Virus record (IMG/VR): IMGVR_UViG_3300032323_001214
Location: 185,607-249,606 of that record
DNA: 64,000 nucleotides
Strand: one strand, 5' to 3'
Positions 19,341 to 49,252 of the stretch are shown here, piece after piece (the stretch's first letter is position 1; each line of letters opens with the position of its first letter). Under the pieces are notes generated by a model. It saw only the letters and a list, made by a program, of their open reading frames with translations, was not told where the DNA came from and made no database searches. Made by a program: the position numbers and the translations under genes.

Positions 19341-19390
19341 GGCTATCGCCTTTGTAAAAAGAACGATAAATACTAGATAAGGTGATTTTT

Positions 19391-19954
19391 ATGTTTTATG
19401 TATATGCGTATTTGAGAGAAGATGGTAGTCCTTATTACATAGGAAAAGGAAAGAACAATCGTGCTTGGAAAAAAGGGAAGGGAGAAATCTCCCCACCTAA
19501 AGATATTTCTATGATAGTTATCATGGAAACTGGTTTGTCTGAATTGGGCGCACTAGCTATAGAAAGAAGAATGATTAAGTGGTATGGTAGAAAAGATTTA
19601 GGAACAGGAATTCTTCATAATAAGACAGAAGGCGGTGACGGAGTTTCAGGTGCTCGACAAACAAAAGAACATATACAAAAGCGTATAATTTCAAGTAAAG
19701 GAAAACCGATGGGCATGACGGGCAAGAAACATACAGCAGAATCCAATCACAAAAGAAGTGTTGCTATGTTAGGAAAAAATATCGGGCCACAATCAGCAGA
19801 ACACCGCCTTGCTAGTGGGTTAGCTAAAAGGGGAATGAAATATAAACCACAAGAAATTCTACAATGTTCTTATTGTAATAAATTAGGTGGCGCCGCAAAT
19901 ATGAAAAGATATCATATGGAAAATTGTAAATTAATAAAAGAGGAATATGTATGA
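19391..19954 (+). CDS. GIY-YIG homing endonuclease with NUMOD3-like repeats
   Basis: [20 protein letters not shown]..., N.T.GGDG; GKKHT.E motif; late box at 19365-19372. Confidence 0.85.
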
Positions 19955-22923
19955 GCCAACAAAATATTGACTTTGGTACATTTCCTGATGATCCTGATGC
20001 CGATGCTATAAGAACAGCGTTTCAAAAAGTACAGAATAATTTCAGTGAATTATACACAGTTACATCGGATTCATCAGTAACGTCAGTAAACAGATCCTCA
20101 GGTTCTGGAATAACAGTTAACGCTCCTACGGGAAATGTAGTAGTTAGTGCAAACGTGTATAGGGTAGAAGTTTCTACATCTACACTAAGTATAGGTATAG
20201 GTGCAAACAATTTGCCATCCCCTGCACTATATACGTCCGGTTCACAAACACTAGTTATTGACTTACCGGCTAATATTACAACAAATAATCTTACAACTAT
20301 AGGTAATGCAAATATCGGTGGATATGCAAATGTGTTAGGTAATGTCACTGGTGGTAATTTAAACACAAGTGGTGTAGTGTCTGCTACAGGTAACATAACT
20401 GGTGGTAATTTAAACACAAGTGGTGTCGTGTCTGCTATTGGTAATATTACTGGCGGAAACCTAACAACCGTCGGGGCATTAAGTGTGACCGGTAACGCTA
20501 ACGTAGGAAACATAGGTGCTACTACTGGTGTATTTACAGGAAATATAACTTCTCTTAATGCAAATTTGGGCAATTCTGTATCAGCAAACTATTTTGTAGG
20601 TGATGGTAGTTTATTAACAAACGTCATCCCTACTGCAGGCCCTGTAATTTCAAATGGTACAAGTTATGTTAATGTGGCAACATCCGGTGGCAATATTGTA
20701 TCTAATGTTGCAGGAGCTACAATTTTAACGTTATCTGCATCTGGTTCAAATTTAACAGGCTATTCCAATGTAACAGGTAATATATCTGCATCCAATGCAA
20801 GCTTGGGTAATTCAGTAACTGCAAATTATTTTTTAGGAAATCTTTATGGTGCAGCCAACACTGCGGCAACGGTAACGTCGGCTACACAATCTAATATAAC
20901 AAGCGTTGGTACATTAACATCATTAGGTGTTAATGGAACTATTACTGCTGTTGCCGTCACTGCTAATACAGGTATATTTACTGGTAATGGTAGTGGATTG
21001 AGTGCAATAGCAGGTGCTAATGTTTTGGGGTTTGTTTCAAACGCTAATGTTGCTAATACTGCATATGCTGTAGCAGGTGCTAACGTTAGTGGTCAAGTAG
21101 GCTTTGCCGCAACAGCGAATGCTGTAGCAGGAGCCAATGTAAGTGGTGAAGTAAGCTTTGCCGCAACAGCGAATGCTGTAGCAGGAGCCAATGTAAGTGG
21201 TACTGTTGCTAATGCATCCCATTCAGCTACTGCAAACACTGTAACAACTGCGGCACAACCCAACATCACTAGTACAGGCACATTAATAAGTCTAGATGTT
21301 ACCGGAAACGTAACTGCGGGTAATATATATGCTAACGCAGGTACTATTGGTGCTAATCTGTTAACAGGTACATTAACAACTAATATCCAACCAAACATTA
21401 CACAAGTAGGAACACTAGTAGCACTAAACGTTACCGGTAATGCTGTAGTAGGAAATGTATATGCAAATAGTGGTACTATACAAGCAAACAATTTTGTAGG
21501 TAATGGTGCTGGACTAACAAATATATCAGTGAGTGCGGGAAGTTATATTGAAAACGGCAGTAGCAATATTTCTATTTCTGCGAATAGTAATGCATCATTT
21601 AATATTGCAGGTAACGCAAATGTTATGGTAGTTACTGATACTGGTGCAAACATTAATGGTTATGCTAATGTGTCAGGGAATATTACCGCAGGTAATGTAA
21701 CTGCTACTGGATTAACAGGCGCACTAATAACATCAACTCAATCTAATGTAACATCACTGGGCACACTAACTGGTTTAACAGTAAATGGTATAAGTAATCT
21801 AGGTCCTAATAGCAACGTCACCATTACAGGTGGCGTAGCAAATGCATTCTTGAAAACCAATGGTAGTGGAAGTTTGTCATGGGATACTGCTACATTAGTA
21901 CCGGCTCAAGGGTCCAATACACAAGTTATATTCAATGATGGTGGTTCTACATATGCTGGAAATGCAAATCTAGCATTCAATAAGACAACTGGTGCATTAA
22001 CAGTAGGTGGAAACGTAAACGCAGGAAATGTATCAGGCGGAAATACGGTTACCGCAAACTTTTTACAAGGTGTAATAACCACTGCTTCACAACCCAATAT
22101 AACTGAAGTAGGTTCATTGGGTTATTTAATTGTGTCAGGTAACTTAAATGCAGGCAATATAGTTGGTAATGGTAGTAATCTAACTGAATTGAATGCAAAT
22201 AATATATCAAGTGGTACCTTAGCACAAGCAAGACTTGCAAATAGTTCTCTTACTATTAATGGTTCTAGTATATCATTGGGTGGTTCCGGTACTGTAACCG
22301 CTAACACTACTCAAACATTGACTCTAGGTTCATTCTTAACTGGGACAAGTTTCAACGGTGGCACCGCAGTAACAGCCGCTGTAGATGCTACATCGGCAAA
22401 TACAGCAAGTAAAGTTGTTGCACGTGATTCAAGTGGTAACTTTAGTGCAGGTACAATTACAGCAACATTAAGTGGTGCGGCAACAAGTGCTACTACGGCG
22501 GGTACTGTAACAACAGCAGCACAACCTAACATTACTAGTGTTGGCACTCTATCAAGTTTAGCAGTAACCGGTAACGTTACAATGGCTAATAGTGTTGCAT
22601 CAACATTTACCATAACAGGTGTTACTACAGGTATTACTGCGGCTGGCACTGTTCAAGCAAACGCAACTGCCTTGACTAGAGCAATGAACGTTGTATCAAC
22701 TGTACCATCAGGTACTGGTGTAATATTACCTACAGCAGTTGCAGGTATGGTGGTCTACATTACAAATACTAATGCAAACAGTGTATTCGTTTACCCAGGA
22801 TCAGGTGCACAAATCAATTTGTTAGGAACTAACAATGCGTTCTCTCTTACTTCAAACGCAACAATAACATTTATAGCGCCTACAACAACTCAATGGTACA
22901 CACCAAGTGCCACATATGTATAA
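19951..22923 (+). CDS. Tail fibre / baseplate-associated fibrous protein
   Basis: IDFGT.PDD..D.IR.AF.K...NF.ELY N-terminus; G/N/T/A-rich repeats; repeated [11 protein letters not shown] motif. Confidence 0.75.
20350..20451 (+). repeat. 51-nt in-frame tandem repeat ([17 protein letters not shown])
   Basis: Two near-identical copies. Confidence 0.85.
21101..21201 (+). repeat. 54-nt period in-frame tandem repeat ([15 protein letters not shown])
   Basis: Identical 47-nt blocks at 21101-21147 and 21155-21201; degenerate copies upstream. Confidence 0.9.
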
Positions 22924-26079: not shown

Positions 26080-28533
26080 ATGACAAGCGCAATAAACACA
26101 AACGGAATTAATGTAAACTATCCAGTACCCGGAGTTAATAATAACTCACAGGGTTTTAGAGATAATTTTACTGCCATCAGAACTAACTTAAACACTACTG
26201 CTACTGAGATAACAGACTTGCAAAATAAAGTTGTCGTCAAGCAAGCACTAGATGGTACTGTGATTAATAATGATATGGCTAATGCAGTCATTAGCAACGC
26301 AGTAACACGCAGTTTTAGGGCAAGTACTTATAATTTGGGTAACGCACTAAGTGGTACCGTATTAGTAGATGTATCATTGGGTGATGTACAATACGGAACT
26401 ATTGCTGGTAATACGATATTATCATTCGGTGGCTGGGCACCTAGTGGCACACAAAGTTCACTTGAACTAGTATTAGGATTTTCCAATGCACAAGCAGTAG
26501 TTAGTTTCCCCACTACCGTAATAAACAACGCAGATTATGGTTCTACTACTATCGAGAATTATAGTTCTGGTGGAAGCTTTTTAACAGTAACTGTACCATA
26601 CGGAGTCACACAACTAGGTTTTGATTTGTCCACTCTTGATTGCGGTAATTCAATTTATATTGCACCAACAAATCGTCCTAGACAATCAACACAGATATTC
26701 AATCGCACACCTCCGCCAACAGGCCAGCAAGGTGATGTTCAAGGTGCGTTCGCTATTGATCCATTACAAACAGCACAACCAACAACTTGTACTGCGACTG
26801 AAGGTACGTTTGAAATAATTACATGTAATAGTACCGCAGGTTTCTACTTAGATATGCCTATTGTATTTACTGGAAACGTGTTCGGTGGTATTACTGCTGG
26901 TACAACATATTATGTTAGAGTTATACCTTCAAGTACTACGTTTACTATATCTGCGTCTCCGGGTACTGTTTCAGGACCTAGTGCCGCAGTAAATTTAAGC
27001 ACCGCATCAGGTACAATGATTGCATCGCCGGTGCAATATCTATATGCTTCTACAGGTAATTACAATGGTAACATTGTTAGTAAGACAGCAACTAGTACTA
27101 CAGCTTCTTCAAATACACAAGCTGTAACATCAGTTGCGTCAACTGGTAATTTAATAACAGTTACTAGTACAGCAAATTATGCATTGAATGATCCTATTGT
27201 ATTTTCTGGCACAACGGGCGCACAGAATTCATTCATAACTTTCAACTTAGCAAACACTATTCAAATTAGTAGTGTCGCTGACTTTACAGTAGGTATGCCT
27301 GTCACATTTTTAGGCACTATTTGGGAAGGAAACTTAAATCAGGGAAATACTTTCTATGTGAATACTGTTCAACCTACAGTAACTGCAGGATTGATACAAA
27401 TACAAGGTCAATACACAATTGCAACGGCTGGAACAACTAACTTCACATTATTGGGAGCCGCAAACAATAACGTAGGTACTTCGTTCACTGCTACCGCAAA
27501 CGGATTATACACGTCAGGTAATTTTGTTATAGGACAACCATATACTATTGCTACTTCGGGTACTACTAACTTTGTAGCGTTAGGGTCAGCAAGTAATACT
27601 GCAGGCACCACATTTACGGCTACAGGTACAGGTTTAGTTAGCTCTGGTAGTTTTGTGGTAGGTGCAAGCTATACTATTGTTACTCCCGGCACAACAGATT
27701 TTACGTTATTAGGAGCCTCAAATAGTTTAGCAAATACAACATTTACGGCTACTGGAAACGGATTAATAACTGCAGGTAGTTTTGTGACTACAAAATCATA
27801 TACTATTGTTAGTGCAGGGTCAACTAACTTCACATTAATTGGAGCTGCTAATAACAATCCAGGCACTACTTTTGTTGCAACAGGGGCAGGTACTGGTACT
27901 GGAACTGCTAATCAAGGAAATGGTACAGCGGCACAAGGAACTGGAACTGCTGTACAAGGAACTGGCACAGCAGTGGCATCTGGTCAATTCACTGTAGCAA
28001 GTACTTACGGTGGTGCAAATATTGATTTAGCAGGCAATGTTAGTGGTACGCCAATGGTAGTTAGATATGGCGGCGTAATGTCAACTTATGCTAATGGTAA
28101 TATTACTAGTAATATTATATCAGGTACTACTTACTATGTTCAAAGCATTGCGTCAGGTACTACACTCACTATCTCTGCTACACCAGATGGTGCACCAATT
28201 CAATTGTTTAATGCTACTGGTCCAGCGTCAGGTCCTCAGTCTATGAATGCCACTGTGACAACAAATTTTACCATTACTGTCAACAATACTAATTCGTTAG
28301 TAGTGAATGATGCTATCATCTTTACTGGAAACGTATTTGGTAATATAACTGCAAATGTTCCATACTATATAAGTAGCATTGACACTGGAAATTCACAAAT
28401 AACGATATCAAGTACACGTTACAATGGTATTGCTGGACAAATTAAACCTTTAACTACAGCTAGTGGTTCTATGACTGCAAACAGCATTCAGGGAACTAAT
28501 ATTTGGAAAAGATTACCACTCAACAGTTGGTAA
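26080..28533 (+). CDS. Tail fibre / appendage protein
   Basis: YPVPG.NN.SQGFRDNF N-terminus, beta-rich repeats, W.R..L..W C-terminus; late box at 26052-26059. Confidence 0.7.
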   Translation: MTSAINTNGINVNYPVPGVNNNSQGFRDNFTAIRTNLNTTATEITDLQNKVVVKQALDGTVINNDMANAVISNAVTRSFRASTYNLGNALSGTVLVDVSLGDVQYGTIAGNTILSFGGWAPSGTQSSLELVLGFSNAQAVVSFPTTVINNADYGSTTIENYSSGGSFLTVTVPYGVTQLGFDLSTLDCGNSIYIAPTNRPRQSTQIFNRTPPPTGQQGDVQGAFAIDPLQTAQPTTCTATEGTFEIITCNSTAGFYLDMPIVFTGNVFGGITAGTTYYVRVIPSSTTFTISASPGTVSGPSAAVNLSTASGTMIASPVQYLYASTGNYNGNIVSKTATSTTASSNTQAVTSVASTGNLITVTSTANYALNDPIVFSGTTGAQNSFITFNLANTIQISSVADFTVGMPVTFLGTIWEGNLNQGNTFYVNTVQPTVTAGLIQIQGQYTIATAGTTNFTLLGAANNNVGTSFTATANGLYTSGNFVIGQPYTIATSGTTNFVALGSASNTAGTTFTATGTGLVSSGSFVVGASYTIVTPGTTDFTLLGASNSLANTTFTATGNGLITAGSFVTTKSYTIVSAGSTNFTLIGAANNNPGTTFVATGAGTGTGTANQGNGTAAQGTGTAVQGTGTAVASGQFTVASTYGGANIDLAGNVSGTPMVVRYGGVMSTYANGNITSNIISGTTYYVQSIASGTTLTISATPDGAPIQLFNATGPASGPQSMNATVTTNFTITVNNTNSLVVNDAIIFTGNVFGNITANVPYYISSIDTGNSQITISSTRYNGIAGQIKPLTTASGSMTANSIQGTNIWKRLPLNSW
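27385..27900 (+). repeat. Four ~43-aa tandem repeats (YTIxTxGTTxFxLLGAxxNxxGTTFTATG)
   Basis: Visible in the translation of 26080-28533. Confidence 0.8.
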
Positions 28534-38697: not shown

Positions 38698-38710
38698 AAT
38701 GATAAATGCT

Positions 38711-38780
38711 GATAAATAAGTGTGAGTCGCGGCGCTACCAACGCCCACTCACTCTAATGCTACAAGGAGCAATCAGCATG
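38711..38780 (+). ncRNA. Candidate structured leader RNA, copy B
   Basis: GTGAGT/ACTCAC stem, CGC/C loop, GGCG/CGCC inner stem, TCTAA, TGCT/AGCA hairpin over the SD; covaries with 14777-14848. Confidence 0.6.
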
Positions 38781-39311
38781 AATATTTATAACAAATCTAA
38801 TCCTCCCTCAGGATTCTACGTATATGCCTACATAAGAGAAGATGGTACACCATACTATATCGGTAAAGGTATAGGTGATAGAGCATGGTATAAGTCGCCC
38901 ACTGAAATAGGCAAGCCTGCGGACCACAGCCGAATTATAATTATTGAGCAAAATCTTACTGAGTTAGGGTCATTAGCCATAGAACGCCAATTAATACGAT
39001 GGTATGGACGTAAAGATTTGGATACAGGAATACTACGAAATCTAACTGACGGTGGTGATGGAACTAGTGGGAACAAAAGAAGTGTTGAAACAATAGAAAA
39101 AATGAGAAGATCAATGCTTGGAAAAAATACCGGACCCCAATCATTGGAACATAAAACTAATGCCGCAAATGCCAGACGAGGTGTAAAACAAAGCCAAAAA
39201 CACATCCAAGCGAGGGTCAATGCTTGTAAAGGTAAACCCAGATCAGATGAAGTAAAGCTAAAAATTAGTATGAGTAAGACCGGTGTAAAAAGAAGCCAAA
39301 CTATGAAATAA
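38778..39311 (+). CDS. GIY-YIG homing endonuclease (paralogue of 19391-19954)
   Basis: FYVYAYIREDGTPYYIGKG ... WYGRKDL.TGIL.N.TDGGDG; NUMOD3-like repeats. Confidence 0.85.
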   Translation: MNIYNKSNPPSGFYVYAYIREDGTPYYIGKGIGDRAWYKSPTEIGKPADHSRIIIIEQNLTELGSLAIERQLIRWYGRKDLDTGILRNLTDGGDGTSGNKRSVETIEKMRRSMLGKNTGPQSLEHKTNAANARRGVKQSQKHIQARVNACKGKPRSDEVKLKISMSKTGVKRSQTMK

Positions 39312-45754: not shown

Positions 45755-47443
45755 TATGAGCAATATTCTAAAAGGTTTAAATGAAAGGTATTTTAGTCGT
45801 GATGATCAAGACCAACAGAATGCCATGGATACACGCCGTAGAAGCGATTTGAGTGGCGAACGAAATGCTGGTCTTAATGAACCAGATGAATTACCTACTA
45901 TACCTCAACAAAGTCGCAATGGCGTTTATGAATACGATGTACCTACTGGTCAAGAAAAAATAGCACAAGAATTAGGATTACAACTGCATAAAGGTCATTG
46001 GTTCTCTCGTGTCCCGGTTCAAAAAGCAAATTTTCAATTTGGTCGTCCTCAATTTCATGAGATTCCAGCAAAAAATGTATATGAAGCAGAACAGGATTAC
46101 GGTCCTGAGTATCAAGATAAAGTAAAGCGTCTAGGTCAGATGGCTAAACAAGGTGAGCGTAAAACTGTTTGGGATCCTGTCAAGCGTGTGTACAAGACTG
46201 TTCCAGTAAATCCAGCTAAACAGCAAGGTGTGGCGGAAGAACAATTAGATGAAAAGTGCTGGGACACTCACAAGCAAGTTGGAATGAAAAACAAGGGCGG
46301 CAGAATGGTGCCTAACTGTGTTCCAAAAGAAAGCGTTGGGGAAGAGCAAGATATTACTGAAGAAAAATGTCCACACTGCGGTGGACCAATGTTCAGTGAA
46401 ATGATTATGAACGAGAAGAAAGATGCTTGCTACTACAAAGTTAAGAGCCGTTATAAAGTATGGCCAAGTGCTTATGCCAGTGGTGCATTAGTTAAGTGTC
46501 GTAAGAGTGGAGCAGACAGTTGGGGCGATGGTGGCAAGAAGAATGAAAGTTCTATACTAGAAGGTATTGAACAAGTAGATGAGAACTTACACAAGTGGTT
46601 CAAAGAGAAGTGGGTTCGTTTTGGTCCCGATGGTAAGATTCGTGGTGACTGTGCTAGAGGTGATGATAGTGAAGGTAAGCCAAAGTGTTTGCCACAAAGT
46701 AAAGCACACAGTCTAGGTAAGAAGGGTCGTGCAAGTGCTGCCTCACGTAAGCGCAGAGAAGATCCTAATCCAGAACGCCACGGTAAAGCAATCAATGTTA
46801 ACACTAAGAAAAAGTCAAATGAAGGTGTGGCGGAAGGCTCTACTTTTCCTGGCTCACTGAGTGGTCGTGAATGGTCAAAAGTTGGTAGACAAATAAAGTC
46901 ATCTCAGGGTCGTGATAGCAGTGTTACAAGTCCACATCAACGAAAAGATTGGTACAATCCAAAAGATCCAAGAAGTAGCAAACAGCAAAAATTGGACTAT
47001 TTAAAATCTATGAAGGCAAAGCAAGGTGTGGCGGAAGACCAACTTGATGAGATTAGTTCTACCACTGCAAAAAATGTATACAACAAGAGAGAACAAGAAC
47101 ACAAAGACCTAATGAACAAGACTTATGGCAATGCTCAAGATCCACAAGTTCGACAAGCTCAACAAAAACTTGCAAAAGCCGCAAAGTCCTATTTCAATCG
47201 TGGTGCCAAAAAAGGCGTAGAGGAAAGTTATGATTTGGACGCCTTCTCCGGGGTCAAGTTTCTTAATCCAGAGACAGGTAAAATGGGATCATTCTACTAT
47301 TGGTCTTCAATGGAAGGTAAGAACGAGGCGTACTCTATGATTACTAATAAAAAATTGGTGCCGGCCCACAATGACGGGACACCAATGACTTGGGATGAAT
47401 ACAAACAGGCTCTAGATGGTGGTAATCAAAGTGTGGCGGAAGA
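45059..47443 (+). repeat. Dispersed in-frame junction repeat, consensus CAAGGTGTGGCGGAAG
   Basis: [GA]TGGCGGAAG at 45065, 45605, 46230, 46827, 47028, 47433; degenerate copies near 41076, 41202, 41400, 46329, 47211. Confidence 0.85.
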
Positions 47444-47576
47444 ACAACTAGACGAAAAGTGGTCAACGAAATATAAAGACAGTATCAACTGTAGTAATCC
47501 TAAAGGATTTAGCCAAAAAGCACATTGTGCTGGTAAACAGAAAAATGAAAGTGCTGTTATGAAAGGTCTTAAATAA
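45756..47576 (+). CDS. Modular putative head polyprotein (MSNILKGLNE leader)
   Basis: About ten short modules (CW...PNCV, CPHCGG, KKDACY...WPSAYASG, LHKWFKEKW, KWS.KYK.SINC) separated by VAE/LDE/VDE. Confidence 0.7.
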   Translation: MSNILKGLNERYFSRDDQDQQNAMDTRRRSDLSGERNAGLNEPDELPTIPQQSRNGVYEYDVPTGQEKIAQELGLQLHKGHWFSRVPVQKANFQFGRPQFHEIPAKNVYEAEQDYGPEYQDKVKRLGQMAKQGERKTVWDPVKRVYKTVPVNPAKQQGVAEEQLDEKCWDTHKQVGMKNKGGRMVPNCVPKESVGEEQDITEEKCPHCGGPMFSEMIMNEKKDACYYKVKSRYKVWPSAYASGALVKCRKSGADSWGDGGKKNESSILEGIEQVDENLHKWFKEKWVRFGPDGKIRGDCARGDDSEGKPKCLPQSKAHSLGKKGRASAASRKRREDPNPERHGKAINVNTKKKSNEGVAEGSTFPGSLSGREWSKVGRQIKSSQGRDSSVTSPHQRKDWYNPKDPRSSKQQKLDYLKSMKAKQGVAEDQLDEISSTTAKNVYNKREQEHKDLMNKTYGNAQDPQVRQAQQKLAKAAKSYFNRGAKKGVEESYDLDAFSGVKFLNPETGKMGSFYYWSSMEGKNEAYSMITNKKLVPAHNDGTPMTWDEYKQALDGGNQSVAEEQLDEKWSTKYKDSINCSNPKGFSQKAHCAGKQKNESAVMKGLK

Positions 47577-47619
47577 TGAGAGACTATGATTTTTATTGGA
47601 ACTTAAAAGGATACCCCAG

Positions 47620-48066
47620 ATGATATTAGCAGACGCATTGAAAACATTACTAGCTACTAGTTATGCATTCGTAATTAAAACTCAAAACTTTCATTGGAAT
47701 GTTGAAGGGCCAGACTTCCCTCAGTACCATGAATTCTTAGGTAATTTATACGAAGAAGTATATGGTAATGCTATTGACCAAACAGCAGAATTGATTCGTC
47801 AATTAGATAGTTATACACCCGGATCTATTAGTAGATTTGCAGAGTTAAGCCAGATACCAGATCAGATTAAAATTCCACGTGCTGAACTAATGATGGCAGA
47901 ATTGTATGATGATAATCAAAAGATTTTACAAATGTGGAAAGAATCATTTCATATAGCAGAACAAGCTGATGAACAAGGTATAGCTGATTTTATAGCAAGC
48001 CGCATTGACGCACATGGCAAACATGGATGGATGTTGCGTAGTATTTTGAAGAAAGCTCGGGCATAA
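47620..48066 (+). CDS. dps: Dps / ferritin-like DNA protection protein
   Basis: NFHWNVEGPDF..YHEF...LYEE....D..AE.IR; H.KH.WML. Confidence 0.9.
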   Translation: MILADALKTLLATSYAFVIKTQNFHWNVEGPDFPQYHEFLGNLYEEVYGNAIDQTAELIRQLDSYTPGSISRFAELSQIPDQIKIPRAELMMAELYDDNQKILQMWKESFHIAEQADEQGIADFIASRIDAHGKHGWMLRSILKKARA

Positions 48067-48082
48067 ATTTAGAGCAAACCGA

Positions 48083-48190
48083 ACCCACCTTAGGGCCGGT
48101 GTCGCTATCGGTTAGAGCGCAAGCTCAGGCGTCAAAGGGGAGGCTGCTGCCCCATATATGAGTTACGCCAGACTCTATATAAAGTGAGCA
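48083..48190 (+). ncRNA. Candidate orphan structured RNA (multi-stem, pseudoknot)
   Basis: GC-rich intergenic island with four hairpins, a GNRA loop and complementarity between single-stranded segments and loops. Confidence 0.5.
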
Positions 48191-48206
48191 TTTATTTTAG
48201 AACATT

Positions 48207-48641
48207 ATGAAAAAAATTATAACAACAATTATGTTAGCACTCGCAACTACTGCATATGCACAAAAGGCTCCTCAGGGTGTAACATATGACGCAAATATAT
48301 TGAGAGTTAGTGATGGTGACACAATTGTAATCGCAGCTCCATTCTTACCACAACCTTTGAAACCAGAACTAGCTATTCGTATATACGGGGTTGATACTCC
48401 TGAAAAAGGATTTAGAGCAAAATGTCCTGCTGAAGATGCTAAAGGACAAGCTGCAAGTAAATTCACAAAAGATGCAGTAGCAGCCGCACAAAAACGCCAA
48501 GTAATACTATATGCATGGGATAAGTTTGGTGGGCGAGTATTAGGTGATATATTATTAAATGGACAAAGCCTTCGCACTATGTTGATTCAAAATGGATTTG
48601 CACGTGAATATTTTGGTGATGCAAAACAAAGTTGGTGCTAA
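48207..48641 (+). CDS. Thermonuclease (SNase-like) with signal peptide
   Basis: V.DGDT, IRIYGVDTPE, DKFGGRVLG, L..G.AR; N-terminal signal ending AYA. Confidence 0.9.
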   Translation: MKKIITTIMLALATTAYAQKAPQGVTYDANILRVSDGDTIVIAAPFLPQPLKPELAIRIYGVDTPEKGFRAKCPAEDAKGQAASKFTKDAVAAAQKRQVILYAWDKFGGRVLGDILLNGQSLRTMLIQNGFAREYFGDAKQSWC

Positions 48642-48676
48642 AAGATAAATATAGTATAAAAGCAACTTTTAATTAA

Positions 48677-49252
48677 ATGAGATTTAACGAAATACTATCA
48701 GAATCAGCAGTAAAACAACTAGCAAAAAAATTGCCTAGTTTAGAAAAACACGACTATAATACCATTGATAAACTAATGAAAACAGTAGCTAAACAACATA
48801 GTATCACTGGTAAAGCACTGCATGACCTTTTTGTTAAAAAATATAATAAAACTCCCGACGACTGGATTAAAAATAAATTAGATGAGAGCAACGTTGATAC
48901 AGAATTACAACAGGAAGTTGATAAATTCTGTAAATGGGCATGTAACAAACTATCTATTAAAGACGAACCCCATATTGAGTTGAGTATGGATACTGAAGAA
49001 GCGCAAACTAATCATCATACCGGCGGACACATAATGGGTGATGATAAGATTTGGGTGTATGCTAAAAATCGTAATTTAGTAGATATATTACGCACAGTAT
49101 TTCACGAATTGGTTCATGTTCGTCAGGGCGAACTAGATATGATTAATCCGGGTGATAGTTATCCGGGCAGTCCAATTGAGGTGATGGCTGACGCCTTGGC
49201 TGGTAAATATATCAAAATTTATGGTGAAAAGAACCATCATATCTTTCAATAA
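48677..49252 (+). CDS. Zincin-like metallopeptidase domain protein (MRFNEILSE leader)
   Basis: RTVFHELVHVRQ (HExxH) plus downstream E..A; late box 48644-48651. Confidence 0.7.
   Translation: MRFNEILSESAVKQLAKKLPSLEKHDYNTIDKLMKTVAKQHSITGKALHDLFVKKYNKTPDDWIKNKLDESNVDTELQQEVDKFCKWACNKLSIKDEPHIELSMDTEEAQTNHHTGGHIMGDDKIWVYAKNRNLVDILRTVFHELVHVRQGELDMINPGDSYPGSPIEVMADALAGKYIKIYGEKNHHIFQ

What the first reader, a model, noticed from the sequence alone, without database searches (positions are those of the whole stretch)
48083..48190. Orphan compact multi-stem RNA with probable pseudoknots between dps and the nuclease gene
Seen: a GC-rich intergenic island with hairpins GGCCGGT/ATCGGTT (48094-48113), GAGC-GCAA-GCTC (48115-26, GNRA loop), GGGG/CCCC (48137-53) and ATATA.GAGTT/GACTC.TATAT (48154-80). 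The last loop ACGCC (48165-69) is complementary to single-stranded GGCGT (48128-32). The 3' GTG-AGCA (48184-90) can pair with CAC (48086-88) and loop TGCT (48145-48). It is not a tRNA or a simple terminator. Inference: a ribozyme-like or regulatory ncRNA; I cannot assign it to a family.
Basis: partly seen in the sequence, partly recalled or inferred. Interest (0 to 1): 0.72.

Follow-up and report, generated by a model that had tools for sequence, protein, structure and literature searches.

The report
Phage pseudoknot RNA complementary to 23S rRNA
The GC-rich island is one copy of a large, uncatalogued family of small pseudoknotted RNAs that freshwater jumbo phages carry once per genome, and its conserved loops are reverse complements of one of the most conserved stretches of bacterial 23S ribosomal RNA, so it may act on the host ribosome.

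Summary
The single-sequence folding energy is not better than chance (z -0.5). Comparative evidence is strong: at least 181 distinct homologues in viral contigs and at least 120 more metagenome contigs, with 93-95% of cells paired and compensatory changes in 12-13 pairs.

The RNA is not an orphan and is not tied to dps or the nuclease gene. It is single-copy in five of six 250-350 kb jumbo-phage records (a second, weaker match in one or two), co-oriented with varied flanking genes, and absent from Rfam 15 and from cultured phages.

The ACGCC/GGCGU pairing is invariant, so it stays untested.

New finding: the conserved loops are exact reverse complements of 23S rRNA domain IV.
- L1 matches 1920-1931 (12/12).
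- The commonest P4 loop matches 1929-1937.
- The window's own subtype matches 1971-1978 and 1827-1835, the two strands of helix 67.

Best explanation (about 0.4): a phage antisense RNA aimed at the 23S H67-H70 junction. Rivals are a protein-binding or stabilising element with relic similarity, a ribozyme, or a cis translation element. No expression data were available.

The parts
48078..48190 (+). Whole RNA element (type A subtype of the family). It lies between the dps-like stop codon (48064-48066) and the SNase-like start codon (48207).
   Evidence: The covariance-model hit covers window 48077-48192 (54.7 bits, E 2e-10) and is the only hit in the 249.6 kb record. Alignments.
48081..48084 (+). 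5' GAAC motif. In most family members it sits next to, or overlaps, the stop codon of the upstream gene.
   Evidence: Read directly from the family sequences. Its role is unknown.
48087..48098 (+). L1, ACCUUAGGGCCG. It is the reverse complement of 23S rRNA 1920-1931, with 11 Watson-Crick pairs and one G.U. The family consensus ACCUUAGGACCG matches 12 of 12.
   Evidence: 0 of 500 shuffled rRNAs give a match this long. CUUAGG is invariant in the 98 sequences of alignment A1, but those were pre-selected for a [C/A]TTAGG motif. Members found without that filter carry CCCUAGG instead.
48096..48111 (+). P2 hairpin: CCGGUG / UAUCGG with loop UCGC.
   Evidence: helix 1: 96.9% paired. Pair 24/33 is U-A in 9 sequences and G.U in 6.
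48115..48126 (+). GNRA-capped hairpin GAGC-GCAA-GCUC. It is specific to type A.
   Evidence: helices 2-3. The loops are GCAA, GUAA or GAAA in 9 of the 12 relatives that have the hairpin. A GNRA loop exists only on the + strand reading.
48126..48134 (+). Junction CAGGCGUCA. It is the reverse complement of 23S 1827-1835 (5' strand of helix 67). Its GGCGU (48128-48132) is complementary to the P4 loop.
   Evidence: 22 of 500 shuffles. helix 4: 16 of 16 paired, never varies.
48137..48153 (+). P3 hairpin with the 7-nt loop GGCUGCU (48142-48148).
   Evidence: GC55/AU22/CG11/GU9, GC66/CG32, CG57/GC41; 99.4% paired, all 4 pairs compensatory.
48154..48181 (+). P4 hairpin with U48159 bulged and loop ACGCCA (48165-48170). 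UUACGCCA (48163-48170) is the reverse complement of 23S 1971-1978 (3' strand of helix 67).
   Evidence: helix 6: 8 of 10 pairs compensatory. for the rRNA match.
48183..48189 (+). 3' tail AGUGAGC, which pairs with the P3 loop (48143-48148) to form an H-type pseudoknot. G48186 is bulged.
   Evidence: Loop and tail change together in the family: GGGUGCU with GUGACC, GGCUACU with AGUAGC, CCCCCA with UGGGGG, CCUACA with UGUAGG.

Best explanation
The island is a gene, or a 3'-UTR module, for a small structured RNA of about 110 nt. It belongs to a previously uncatalogued family of 79-120 nt RNAs that a clade of freshwater jumbo phages (DNA polymerase nearest the RaK2 / Atu_ph07 group) carries once, occasionally twice, per genome.

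Shown:
- The fold. A 5' hairpin or single strand presents CYUAGGRCCG (L1), followed by optional small hairpins. A P3 hairpin has a 7-nt loop that pairs with the 3' tail (H-type pseudoknot). A long P4 hairpin lies between P3 and the tail and carries a conserved apical loop.
- The + strand is the folded strand.
- The conserved exposed segments are reverse complements of neighbouring, universally conserved strands of the 23S rRNA domain IV junction. L1 matches 1920-1931. The commonest P4 loop matches 1929-1937. Other subtypes match 1966-1976. In the window's own subtype the matches are 1971-1978 and 1827-1835, the two strands of helix 67.

Inferred: the RNA is transcribed with the upstream gene and acts in trans as an antisense RNA. 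The pseudoknotted scaffold holds the loops ready to pair with the H67-H70 junction of 23S rRNA while that region is still unfolded or mobile (nascent rRNA, late 50S precursors, free 50S). This would interfere with, or take control of, large-subunit maturation or subunit joining during infection.

The direction of the effect (inhibition, tethering, or guiding a nuclease or another enzyme) is not known.
For: Real, selected structure:
- 93.5% (main family, 77 distinct sequences) and 95.2% (type A, 16 sequences) of cells are paired.
- 12 of 17 and 13 of 30 pairs show compensatory changes, against 26-48% paired when partners are slid.
- The pseudoknot is supported by covariation.

Strand:
- G.U outnumbers A.C by 42 to 4 and by 65 to 17.
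- GNRA loops exist only on the + strand.
- 87 of 95 upstream ORFs and 79 of 97 downstream ORFs are co-oriented with the RNA.

Importance:
- One copy in the window's 249.6 kb record.
- One hit each in three of five other 260-353 kb records; G001 has a second, weaker hit at 33 bits, and G003 a second, insignificant one (15 bits, E 0.34); one record's only hit is weak at 20 bits.
- At least 181 distinct sequences in viral contigs.

rRNA complementarity, checked against the real E. coli rrn operon:
- L1: 12 of 12, with 0 of 500 shuffled rRNAs as good.
- L1 plus P2 in L071: 23 of 24, to 23S 1910-1933.
- L4a: 9 of 9.
- L4d: 11 nt, 7 of 500 shuffles.
- Junction segment: 9 nt, 22 of 500 shuffles.
- All best matches are antisense and fall within 23S 1827-1978, about 150 of 4,566 nt.
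- Two of them are the two strands of one rRNA helix, H67.
- Most target nucleotides are junction single strands in the Rfam LSU consensus structure.
- The 20-nt target is invariant in all 52 Bacteroidota genomes that gave a hit.
- The main variable L1 position (A 77, G 18, U 3) faces U1923, so 95 of 98 sequences still pair with it.
Against: - No expression, binding or phenotype data exist. No RNA-seq run could be listed, and no cultured phage carries the RNA.
- A third apparent rRNA match (P3 loop against 16S 518-527, 10 of 10, 4 of 500 shuffles) proved to be explained by the internal pseudoknot, and it is not kept in half of the family. A 10-nt match alone can therefore mislead.
- L1 and the P4 loop are partly base-paired inside the RNA. 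The flanking Cs of L1 sit in P1. In the P4 loop, U100-A106 and G98-C108 are paired.
- In the window's subtype the two helix-67 antisense segments pair with each other, so they are not free.
- L1 and L4a overlap by 3 nt on the target, and they lie in permuted order relative to a simple antisense.
- Two P4-loop subtypes (GAGUCGUGC, CCGGGAAU) have no significant rRNA match.
- Four members carry CCCUAGG, which adds a mismatch.
- The target is buried or paired in mature 50S subunits.
Confidence: 0.4

Rival explanations
1. A structured RNA whose conserved loops serve internal tertiary contacts or bind a phage or host protein. Examples would be a pseudoknotted 3'-end module that stabilises or marks the upstream transcript, or a small RNA-protein particle. 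On this view the similarity to antisense 23S rRNA reflects descent from a captured, inverted rDNA fragment, or partial coincidence, and rRNA is not the target.
For: - The element starts within about 15 nt of the upstream stop codon in most loci.
- It is often followed by a promoter-like sequence for the next gene (T4-late-like ATAAATACT, or TTGACA..TATAAT types; sequences). That places it at the end of a transcription unit.
- The 3' end is tucked into a pseudoknot.
- Parts of L1 and L4 are paired internally.
- L1 UAGGA and L4a UC(G)CUA could kiss each other (read from the sequence).
- The P3-loop match to 16S shows that coincidental rRNA matches occur.
Against: - A relic would decay. Instead L1 is nearly invariant over hundreds of divergent phages.
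- Different subtypes carry different antisense segments of the same rRNA junction: 1929-37, 1966-76, and 1971-78 with 1827-35. That points to continuing selection for complementarity.
- A proposed L1-L4 kiss shows no covariation: L4 variants AUCCGCUAC and ACUCGCUAC occur with unchanged L1.
- There is only one copy per genome, which is odd for a general mRNA stabiliser.
Confidence: 0.28
2. A new class of small self-cleaving (or otherwise catalytic) RNA that processes the polycistronic transcript between two genes. The many invariant loop nucleotides and the pseudoknot would form the active site.
For: - Its size, pseudoknot, roughly 30 near-invariant nucleotides, intergenic position and phage context resemble twister-sister, pistol and hatchet RNAs (my own knowledge).
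- Its position at gene boundaries.
Against: - No Rfam ribozyme model matches, even at E<=10.
- The hammerhead core is absent in 181 of 181 sequences.
- The P4 loop, one of the most conserved parts, is replaced wholesale between subtypes. That is unusual for a catalytic core.
- The rRNA complementarity would be left unexplained.
Confidence: 0.1
3. A cis-acting translation element. After termination at the upstream stop codon, the loops would hold ribosomal subunits through rRNA pairing to favour initiation on the next gene, in the manner of calicivirus TURBS or plant-virus 3' enhancers. Alternatively, it is a riboswitch-like leader of the downstream gene.
For: - Tight spacing to the upstream stop codon, and 0-35 nt to the next start codon in many loci.
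- Same strand as both neighbours.
- Complementarity to rRNA.
Against: - Downstream genes are unrelated to one another; the largest cluster holds 15 of 97.
- Many loci have a promoter-like sequence between the RNA and the next gene, so the RNA would not be on that gene's own transcript.
- The complementarity is to the large-subunit rRNA, which is not the subunit that selects start codons.
- There is one copy per genome.
Confidence: 0.12
4. A DNA-level element, such as a replication origin, a recombination or packaging site, or a mobile mini-element, whose hairpins form in single-stranded DNA.
For: - Single copy per genome.
- Patchy position among otherwise syntenic relatives.
Against: - The strand-asymmetric G.U pattern and the GNRA tetraloops are RNA features.
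- Orientation is consistently the same as the flanking genes.
- There are no terminal inverted or direct repeats and no target duplications.
- It is not multi-copy, unlike MITE or REP elements.
Confidence: 0.04

Closest known systems
Plasmid and phage antisense RNAs that use hairpin loops for target recognition (CopA/CopT, RNA I/RNA II)
   Same: A small, highly structured RNA presents short complementary sequences in hairpin loops. This arrangement is suited to fast loop-initiated pairing with a structured target.
   Different: Those RNAs are transcribed opposite their own target gene. This one is encoded in a phage, and its complementarity is to the host's 23S rRNA. It carries several short segments rather than one long one, held on a pseudoknotted scaffold. 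Pairing has not been shown.
Viral cis elements with rRNA complementarity (calicivirus TURBS motif 1; plant-virus 3' cap-independent enhancers and tRNA-shaped ribosome-binding structures)
   Same: A viral RNA structure whose conserved loop is complementary to a conserved rRNA sequence. It lies between or after ORFs.
   Different: Those elements are eukaryotic, target small-subunit rRNA or whole ribosomes, and act in cis on a defined downstream ORF. Here the host is bacterial, the complementarity is to large-subunit domain IV, the neighbouring genes vary, and there is one copy per genome.
Archaeal and eukaryotic box C/D and H/ACA guide RNAs
   Same: Antisense elements of 9-12 nt directed at universally conserved, naturally modified regions of rRNA. 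The regions here lie near psi1911-1917, m5U1939 and m5C1962 (modification sites from my own knowledge).
   Different: No C box is present in 181 of 181 sequences, and there is no H/ACA architecture. No partner proteins have been identified. Bacteria and their phages are not known to use guide RNAs for rRNA modification.
Small pseudoknotted self-cleaving ribozymes found near phage genes (twister-sister, pistol, hatchet)
   Same: Similar size, a pseudoknot, many invariant nucleotides, and intergenic positions in phage-like DNA.
   Different: No model matches. The most conserved hairpin loop is exchangeable between subtypes. No cleavage data exist.
Jumbo-phage ribosome-targeting protein PhiKZ014 (PMC10914614)
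   Same: A jumbo-phage factor proposed to act on the host large ribosomal subunit early in infection.
   Different: That factor is a protein with experimental evidence. This one is an RNA, and the link to the ribosome rests on sequence complementarity only.

Membership tests
Any Rfam 15 family (4,227 models) | Covariance-model score at or above the family's gathering score | tested here: not met
   No hit in the whole window at gathering score. At E<=10 over 47950-48350 there were only three weak, unrelated matches, all far below threshold.
tRNA / tmRNA | Cloverleaf with acceptor stem, anticodon loop and T-loop | tested here: not met
   ARAGORN found no gene in the window. The family has no terminal acceptor-like helix.
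Intrinsic terminator | G+C-rich hairpin followed directly by a U tract | tested here: not met
   The scan found no + strand terminator-like site in 47300-48900. Nine conserved non-U nucleotides separate P4 from any U-rich run.
Riboswitch / cis-regulatory leader | Lies in the 5' UTR of a functionally coherent set of genes | tested here: not met
   Downstream proteins fall into many unrelated clusters; the largest holds 15 of 97. Promoter-like sequences often lie between the RNA and the next gene.
H-type pseudoknot RNA | A hairpin loop pairs with a downstream single strand, and covariation supports it | tested here: met
   Six pairs, 91% of cells paired. Exchanges seen: G-C to C-G (9), G-C to C-G or A-U (5), G.U to A-U (11). 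Whole-loop swaps with matching tails appear.
Trans-acting antisense RNA against rRNA (proposed kind) | Significant complementarity of exposed, conserved segments to rRNA | tested here: met
   L1 matches 12 of 12 (0 of 500 shuffles). Further segments of 8-11 nt are all antisense and all fall within 23S 1827-1978.
Trans-acting antisense RNA against rRNA (proposed kind) | Discrete transcript and physical pairing with rRNA or the ribosome | not testable with these tools
   No RNA run could be listed. The complex predictor needs a protein chain.
Box C/D guide RNA | C box RUGAUGA and D box CUGA flanking the guide | tested here: not met
   The C box is absent in 181 of 181 sequences.
Hammerhead and other known self-cleaving ribozymes | Conserved catalytic core or a model match; self-cleavage | tested here: inconclusive
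   No Rfam ribozyme model matches. CUGAUGA plus GAAA is absent in 181 of 181 sequences. Self-cleavage itself cannot be tested here, so a new class is not excluded.
Repeated intergenic elements (REP, MITE, T4-type PeSL cassettes) | Many copies per genome | tested here: not met
   BLAST and the covariance model each find a single copy in the 249.6 kb record. Five other jumbo-phage records have 1-2.

The most novel reading that the evidence does not exclude
Freshwater jumbo phages encode a dedicated small RNA that base-pairs with the universally conserved H67-H70 junction of host 23S rRNA. It would be a natural anti-ribosomal antisense or guide RNA. With it the phage would block, redirect or mark large-subunit maturation or subunit joining, possibly by recruiting a nuclease or a modifying enzyme. 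No RNA of this kind is known in bacteria or their viruses.
Probability: 0.35. Interest if true: 0.93.

Novelty: categorically new. Interest (0 to 1): 0.8.

Why it matters
If the rRNA reading is right, this would be the first natural RNA from a bacterial virus that targets ribosomal RNA by base pairing. That would be a new route of host takeover. It would also be a ready-made, host-independent antisense scaffold against one of the most conserved sequences in biology. And it would give a handle on when domain IV of 23S rRNA is accessible in cells.

Even if that reading fails, the finding still defines a large, abundant and strongly constrained RNA class, with hundreds of members and essentially one per genome, in a group of uncultured freshwater jumbo phages. 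A covariation-proven pseudoknotted fold is now available, so the class can be added to RNA family databases and tested directly.

Tried and rejected
- Rfam at gathering score and at E<=10 gave no credible match; tRNA/tmRNA search gave nothing.
- Single-sequence folding energy: z -0.5 on the + strand and -0.9 on the - strand, uninformative.
- Repeat search in the window and genome: the element is not repeated.
- BLAST against 50,697 phage records with the window region and with a main-type member: no cultured phage carries it.
- The covariance model found nothing in RaK2, Atu_ph07, XaC1, Phosso or Vibrio phage 2.275.O.
- Bacterial and archaeal genomes: 5 pattern hits. Three were chance matches. 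Two were true members on MAG contigs (Lishizhenia, Haliscomenobacter) that are probably phage DNA.
- Idea that the element is a leader of the nuclease gene: rejected. Most nuclease homologues lack it, and it sits next to many other genes.
- Idea that the P3 loop targets the 16S 530 loop (10 of 10 match): rejected. The loop changes freely together with the 3' tail.
- Idea that the A/G polymorphism in L1 tracks a C/U polymorphism at 23S 1923: not supported. All 52 sampled Bacteroidota genomes with a hit have U.
- My automatic P3-loop finder picked wrong hairpins and was dropped in favour of the model-based alignment.
- Long-range duplex-energy scans against rRNA were uninformative.
- MAFFT alignments could not put P1 in one register, so P1 is supported only by examples (ACAC/GUGU, CUCG/CGAG, UUUGG/CCAGA, ACCCU/AGGGU) and by a weak self-versus-cross statistic.
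- RNA-seq run search listed none.
- Literature searches for the motifs, and for phage RNAs pairing with rRNA, found nothing relevant except protein-based ribosome targeting by PhiKZ.

Full report
**Setting.** The window is the last 64 kb of a 249.6 kb IMG/VR virus record that is about 67% complete. Its family-B DNA polymerase is closest, at 42-49% identity, to those of the RaK2 / CBB / Atu_ph07 / XaC1 jumbo phages. DNA runs that hold the region are freshwater metagenomes. The finding lies between a ferritin/Dps-like ORF (47596-48066) and a staphylococcal-nuclease-like ORF with a signal-peptide-like N-terminus (48207-48641). A PP-loop ATPase and the DNA polymerase lie further downstream.

**Checking the observation.**
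- The thermodynamic fold of the single sequence is unremarkable (z -0.51).
- There is no Rfam match and no tRNA.
- Taken alone, therefore, the sequence would not prove anything. The evidence comes from relatives.

**Relatives.** A search for relatives of the nuclease gene gave 80 loci.
- Only some of them carry the element directly upstream of the nuclease, and others carry a related element elsewhere.
- Three short invariant blocks stood out. It gave 98 distinct sequences that also carried the third block, CCTTAGG.
From the contig names these look mostly like lake samples, plus one Tara Oceans contig.
- In total I hold 181 distinct sequences of 79-120 nt.
- A covariance model built from the first set finds exactly one copy in the window's record. 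Three of five other 260-353 kb records have a single hit; G001 has a second, weaker hit (33 bits), and G003 a second, insignificant one (15 bits, E 0.34).
- The model finds none in five cultured relatives.
- In 185,579 bacterial and archaeal genomes only two true members appeared, both on MAG contigs.

**Context.**
- The RNA is on the same strand as the upstream ORF in 87 of 95 loci and as the downstream ORF in 79 of 97.
- It usually begins within about 15 nt of the upstream stop codon.
- The neighbouring proteins are unrelated from locus to locus.
- In many loci a T4-late-like ATAAATACT, or a TTGACA/TATAAT-type promoter-like sequence, lies between the RNA and the next start codon (sequences).
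- It is therefore a self-contained module at the end of a transcription unit. It is not a leader of the nuclease gene.

**Structure.**
- For the window's own subtype (16 sequences, alignment A4) the four hairpins are 95.2% paired with 13 compensatory pairs. Slid controls give 26-48%.
- For the main family (77 distinct sequences, model-based alignment A5), P3, outer and inner P4, and the pseudoknot are 93.5% paired with 12 of 17 pairs compensatory. Slid controls give 29-43%.
- The second scan gave the decisive result. Where the P3 loop differs, the 3' tail differs in step: GGGUGCU with GUGACC, GGCUACU with AGUAGC, GCCCCCA with UGGGGG, GCCUACA with UGUAGG, GCCCUCG with UGAGGG.
- P1 exists in nearly all members but in shifting registers, so I can only give examples of compensatory variants.
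- The folded strand is the + strand. G.U pairs far outnumber A.C (42 to 4 and 65 to 17), and most type A tetraloops (9 of 12) are GNRA only on this strand.

**rRNA complementarity.** The invariant loops looked familiar, so I fetched the E. coli rrnH operon and compared.
- L1 ACCUUAGGACCG is the exact reverse complement of 23S 1920-1931.
- With the adjoining P2 it reaches 23 of 24 against 1910-1933 in one member and 15 of 15 in another.
- The commonest P4 loop, UUCGCUACC, is the reverse complement of 1929-1937, which directly overlaps L1's target.
- Another subtype's loop, ACGCCAUUCGU, matches 1966-1976.
- In the window's subtype, UUACGCCA matches 1971-1978 and CAGGCGUCA matches 1827-1835.
- Against 500 shuffled rRNAs the L1 match was never reached. 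The others were reached 7-113 times anywhere in 4.5 kb. In the real rRNA, however, all of them fall in one 150-nt stretch and all in antisense orientation.
- The two window segments are the two strands of helix 67 (RNAfold; Rfam LSU consensus structure).
- In that consensus, 1925-1934 and 1963-1971 are junction single strands and almost every nucleotide is upper-case, meaning highly conserved.
- The 20-mer AACGGUCCUAAGGUAGCGAA is identical in all 52 sampled Bacteroidota genomes that gave a hit.
- From my own knowledge, this stretch includes helix 69 and the domain IV junction at the subunit interface. It carries several natural modifications, is the I-CeuI homing site, and is among the last parts of the 50S subunit to fold.

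**A caution I tested.** The P3 loop plus closing pairs, CGGCUGCUGG, is also a perfect reverse complement of the 16S 530 loop (4 of 500 shuffles). That loop varies freely so long as it pairs with the tail, so the match is coincidental or at most dispensable.
- This lowers my confidence that every match is functional. I do not count it as evidence.
- Two P4-loop subtypes have no rRNA match.
- Parts of L1 and L4 are paired inside the RNA.
- In type A the two helix-67 antisense segments pair with each other, an invariant pairing that is a mirror image of helix 67 itself.

**Interpretation.**
- Shown: a large, strongly constrained, essentially single-copy, + strand, pseudoknotted RNA family whose conserved exposed segments are antisense to the 23S domain IV junction.
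- Inferred: it acts by pairing with that junction when the junction is accessible.
- Different subtypes keep different antisense pieces of the same junction. To me that argues for continuing selection on complementarity rather than a decaying relic.
- I put this mechanism at about 0.4.
- The rivals are: a protein-binding or 3'-end-stabilising module with relic similarity (0.28), a cis translation element (0.12), a new ribozyme (0.1), and a DNA-level site (0.04).
- None of these could be tested further here.

**Comparison with what is known.**
- It belongs to no Rfam family.
- It is not a tRNA, terminator, riboswitch, C/D guide or repeat element (see the membership table).
- In proposed working it is nearest to loop-presenting antisense RNAs and to viral elements with rRNA complementarity, but it differs from both in target, host and genetic arrangement.
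- Searches of the paper library found no description of such an RNA. The nearest functional parallel is the PhiKZ protein that binds the 50S subunit (PMC10914614).

**Verdict.** I rate the feature as categorically new with interest 0.8, on the understanding that its function rests on sequence inference.

Noticed in passing
window 19382-19954 and 38706-39311 (+): Two ORFs share a 56-nt repeat that encodes ..[17 protein letters not shown], a GIY-YIG-like motif. The second ORF has a NUMOD3 motif (E 1.6e-4). They are probably free-standing homing endonuclease genes.
   Followed up: partly
window 20337-22591 and 27411-27971: Several in-frame tandem and dispersed repeats of 51, 54, 99, 129 and 21 nt units. 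They look like repeat-rich fibre or adhesin-like genes.
   Followed up: no
window 45756-47576 (+): A 606-aa ORF (weak DUF5872 match, phrog_727) holds three copies of a 35-nt repeat encoding QGVAEEQLDEK-like segments, at 46224, 47022 and 47427.
   Followed up: no
window 47596-48066 and 48207-48641 (+): The phage encodes a ferritin/Dps-like protein and a staphylococcal-nuclease-like protein. The nuclease's N-terminus (MKKIITTIMLALATTAYA) looks like a signal peptide, which suggests an exported nuclease.
   Followed up: no
L019, L106, L224, L225, L243, L272, L293 (element regions): This subtype carries an internal CCUAAGG(CGUC) that is perfectly complementary to L1's CCUUAGG. In these members L1 is masked by a copy of its own presumed target sequence.
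   Followed up: partly
L210 (record G001, 76940-77018) and L012:3928-4033: L210 is a second, divergent copy in one complete 353 kb genome. It keeps the P3 loop, the tail and the P4 loop but has a different 5' hairpin without L1. L012 is a half-degenerate type A copy downstream of a nuclease gene.
   Followed up: partly
L006:2224-2322: A member in which both the P3 loop (GGGAACCC) and the tail (GGGUUC) are replaced by a different complementary pair. This was the first hint of the pseudoknot.
   Followed up: yes
downstream of the element in many loci (e.g. L084, L005, L089, L088, L147, L160): Two kinds of promoter-like sequence recur just 3' of the RNA. One is ATAAATACT a few bases before the ATG (T4-late-like, giving nearly leaderless genes). 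The other is TTGCAA/TTGACA-N17-TATAAT. This suggests the RNA marks a boundary between transcription units.
   Followed up: no
window 48142-48151: CGGCUGCUGG-type P3 loops are a perfect reverse complement of 16S rRNA 518-527 (the 515F/519R primer site). Because the loop covaries with the tail, I treat this as coincidence.
   Followed up: yes
L219 and L221 (genome contigs): The only true members in prokaryote genome assemblies lie on contigs binned to Bacteroidota MAGs (Lishizhenia, 14.6 kb; Haliscomenobacter, 183 kb). This could be a host hint or mis-binned phage DNA.
   Followed up: no
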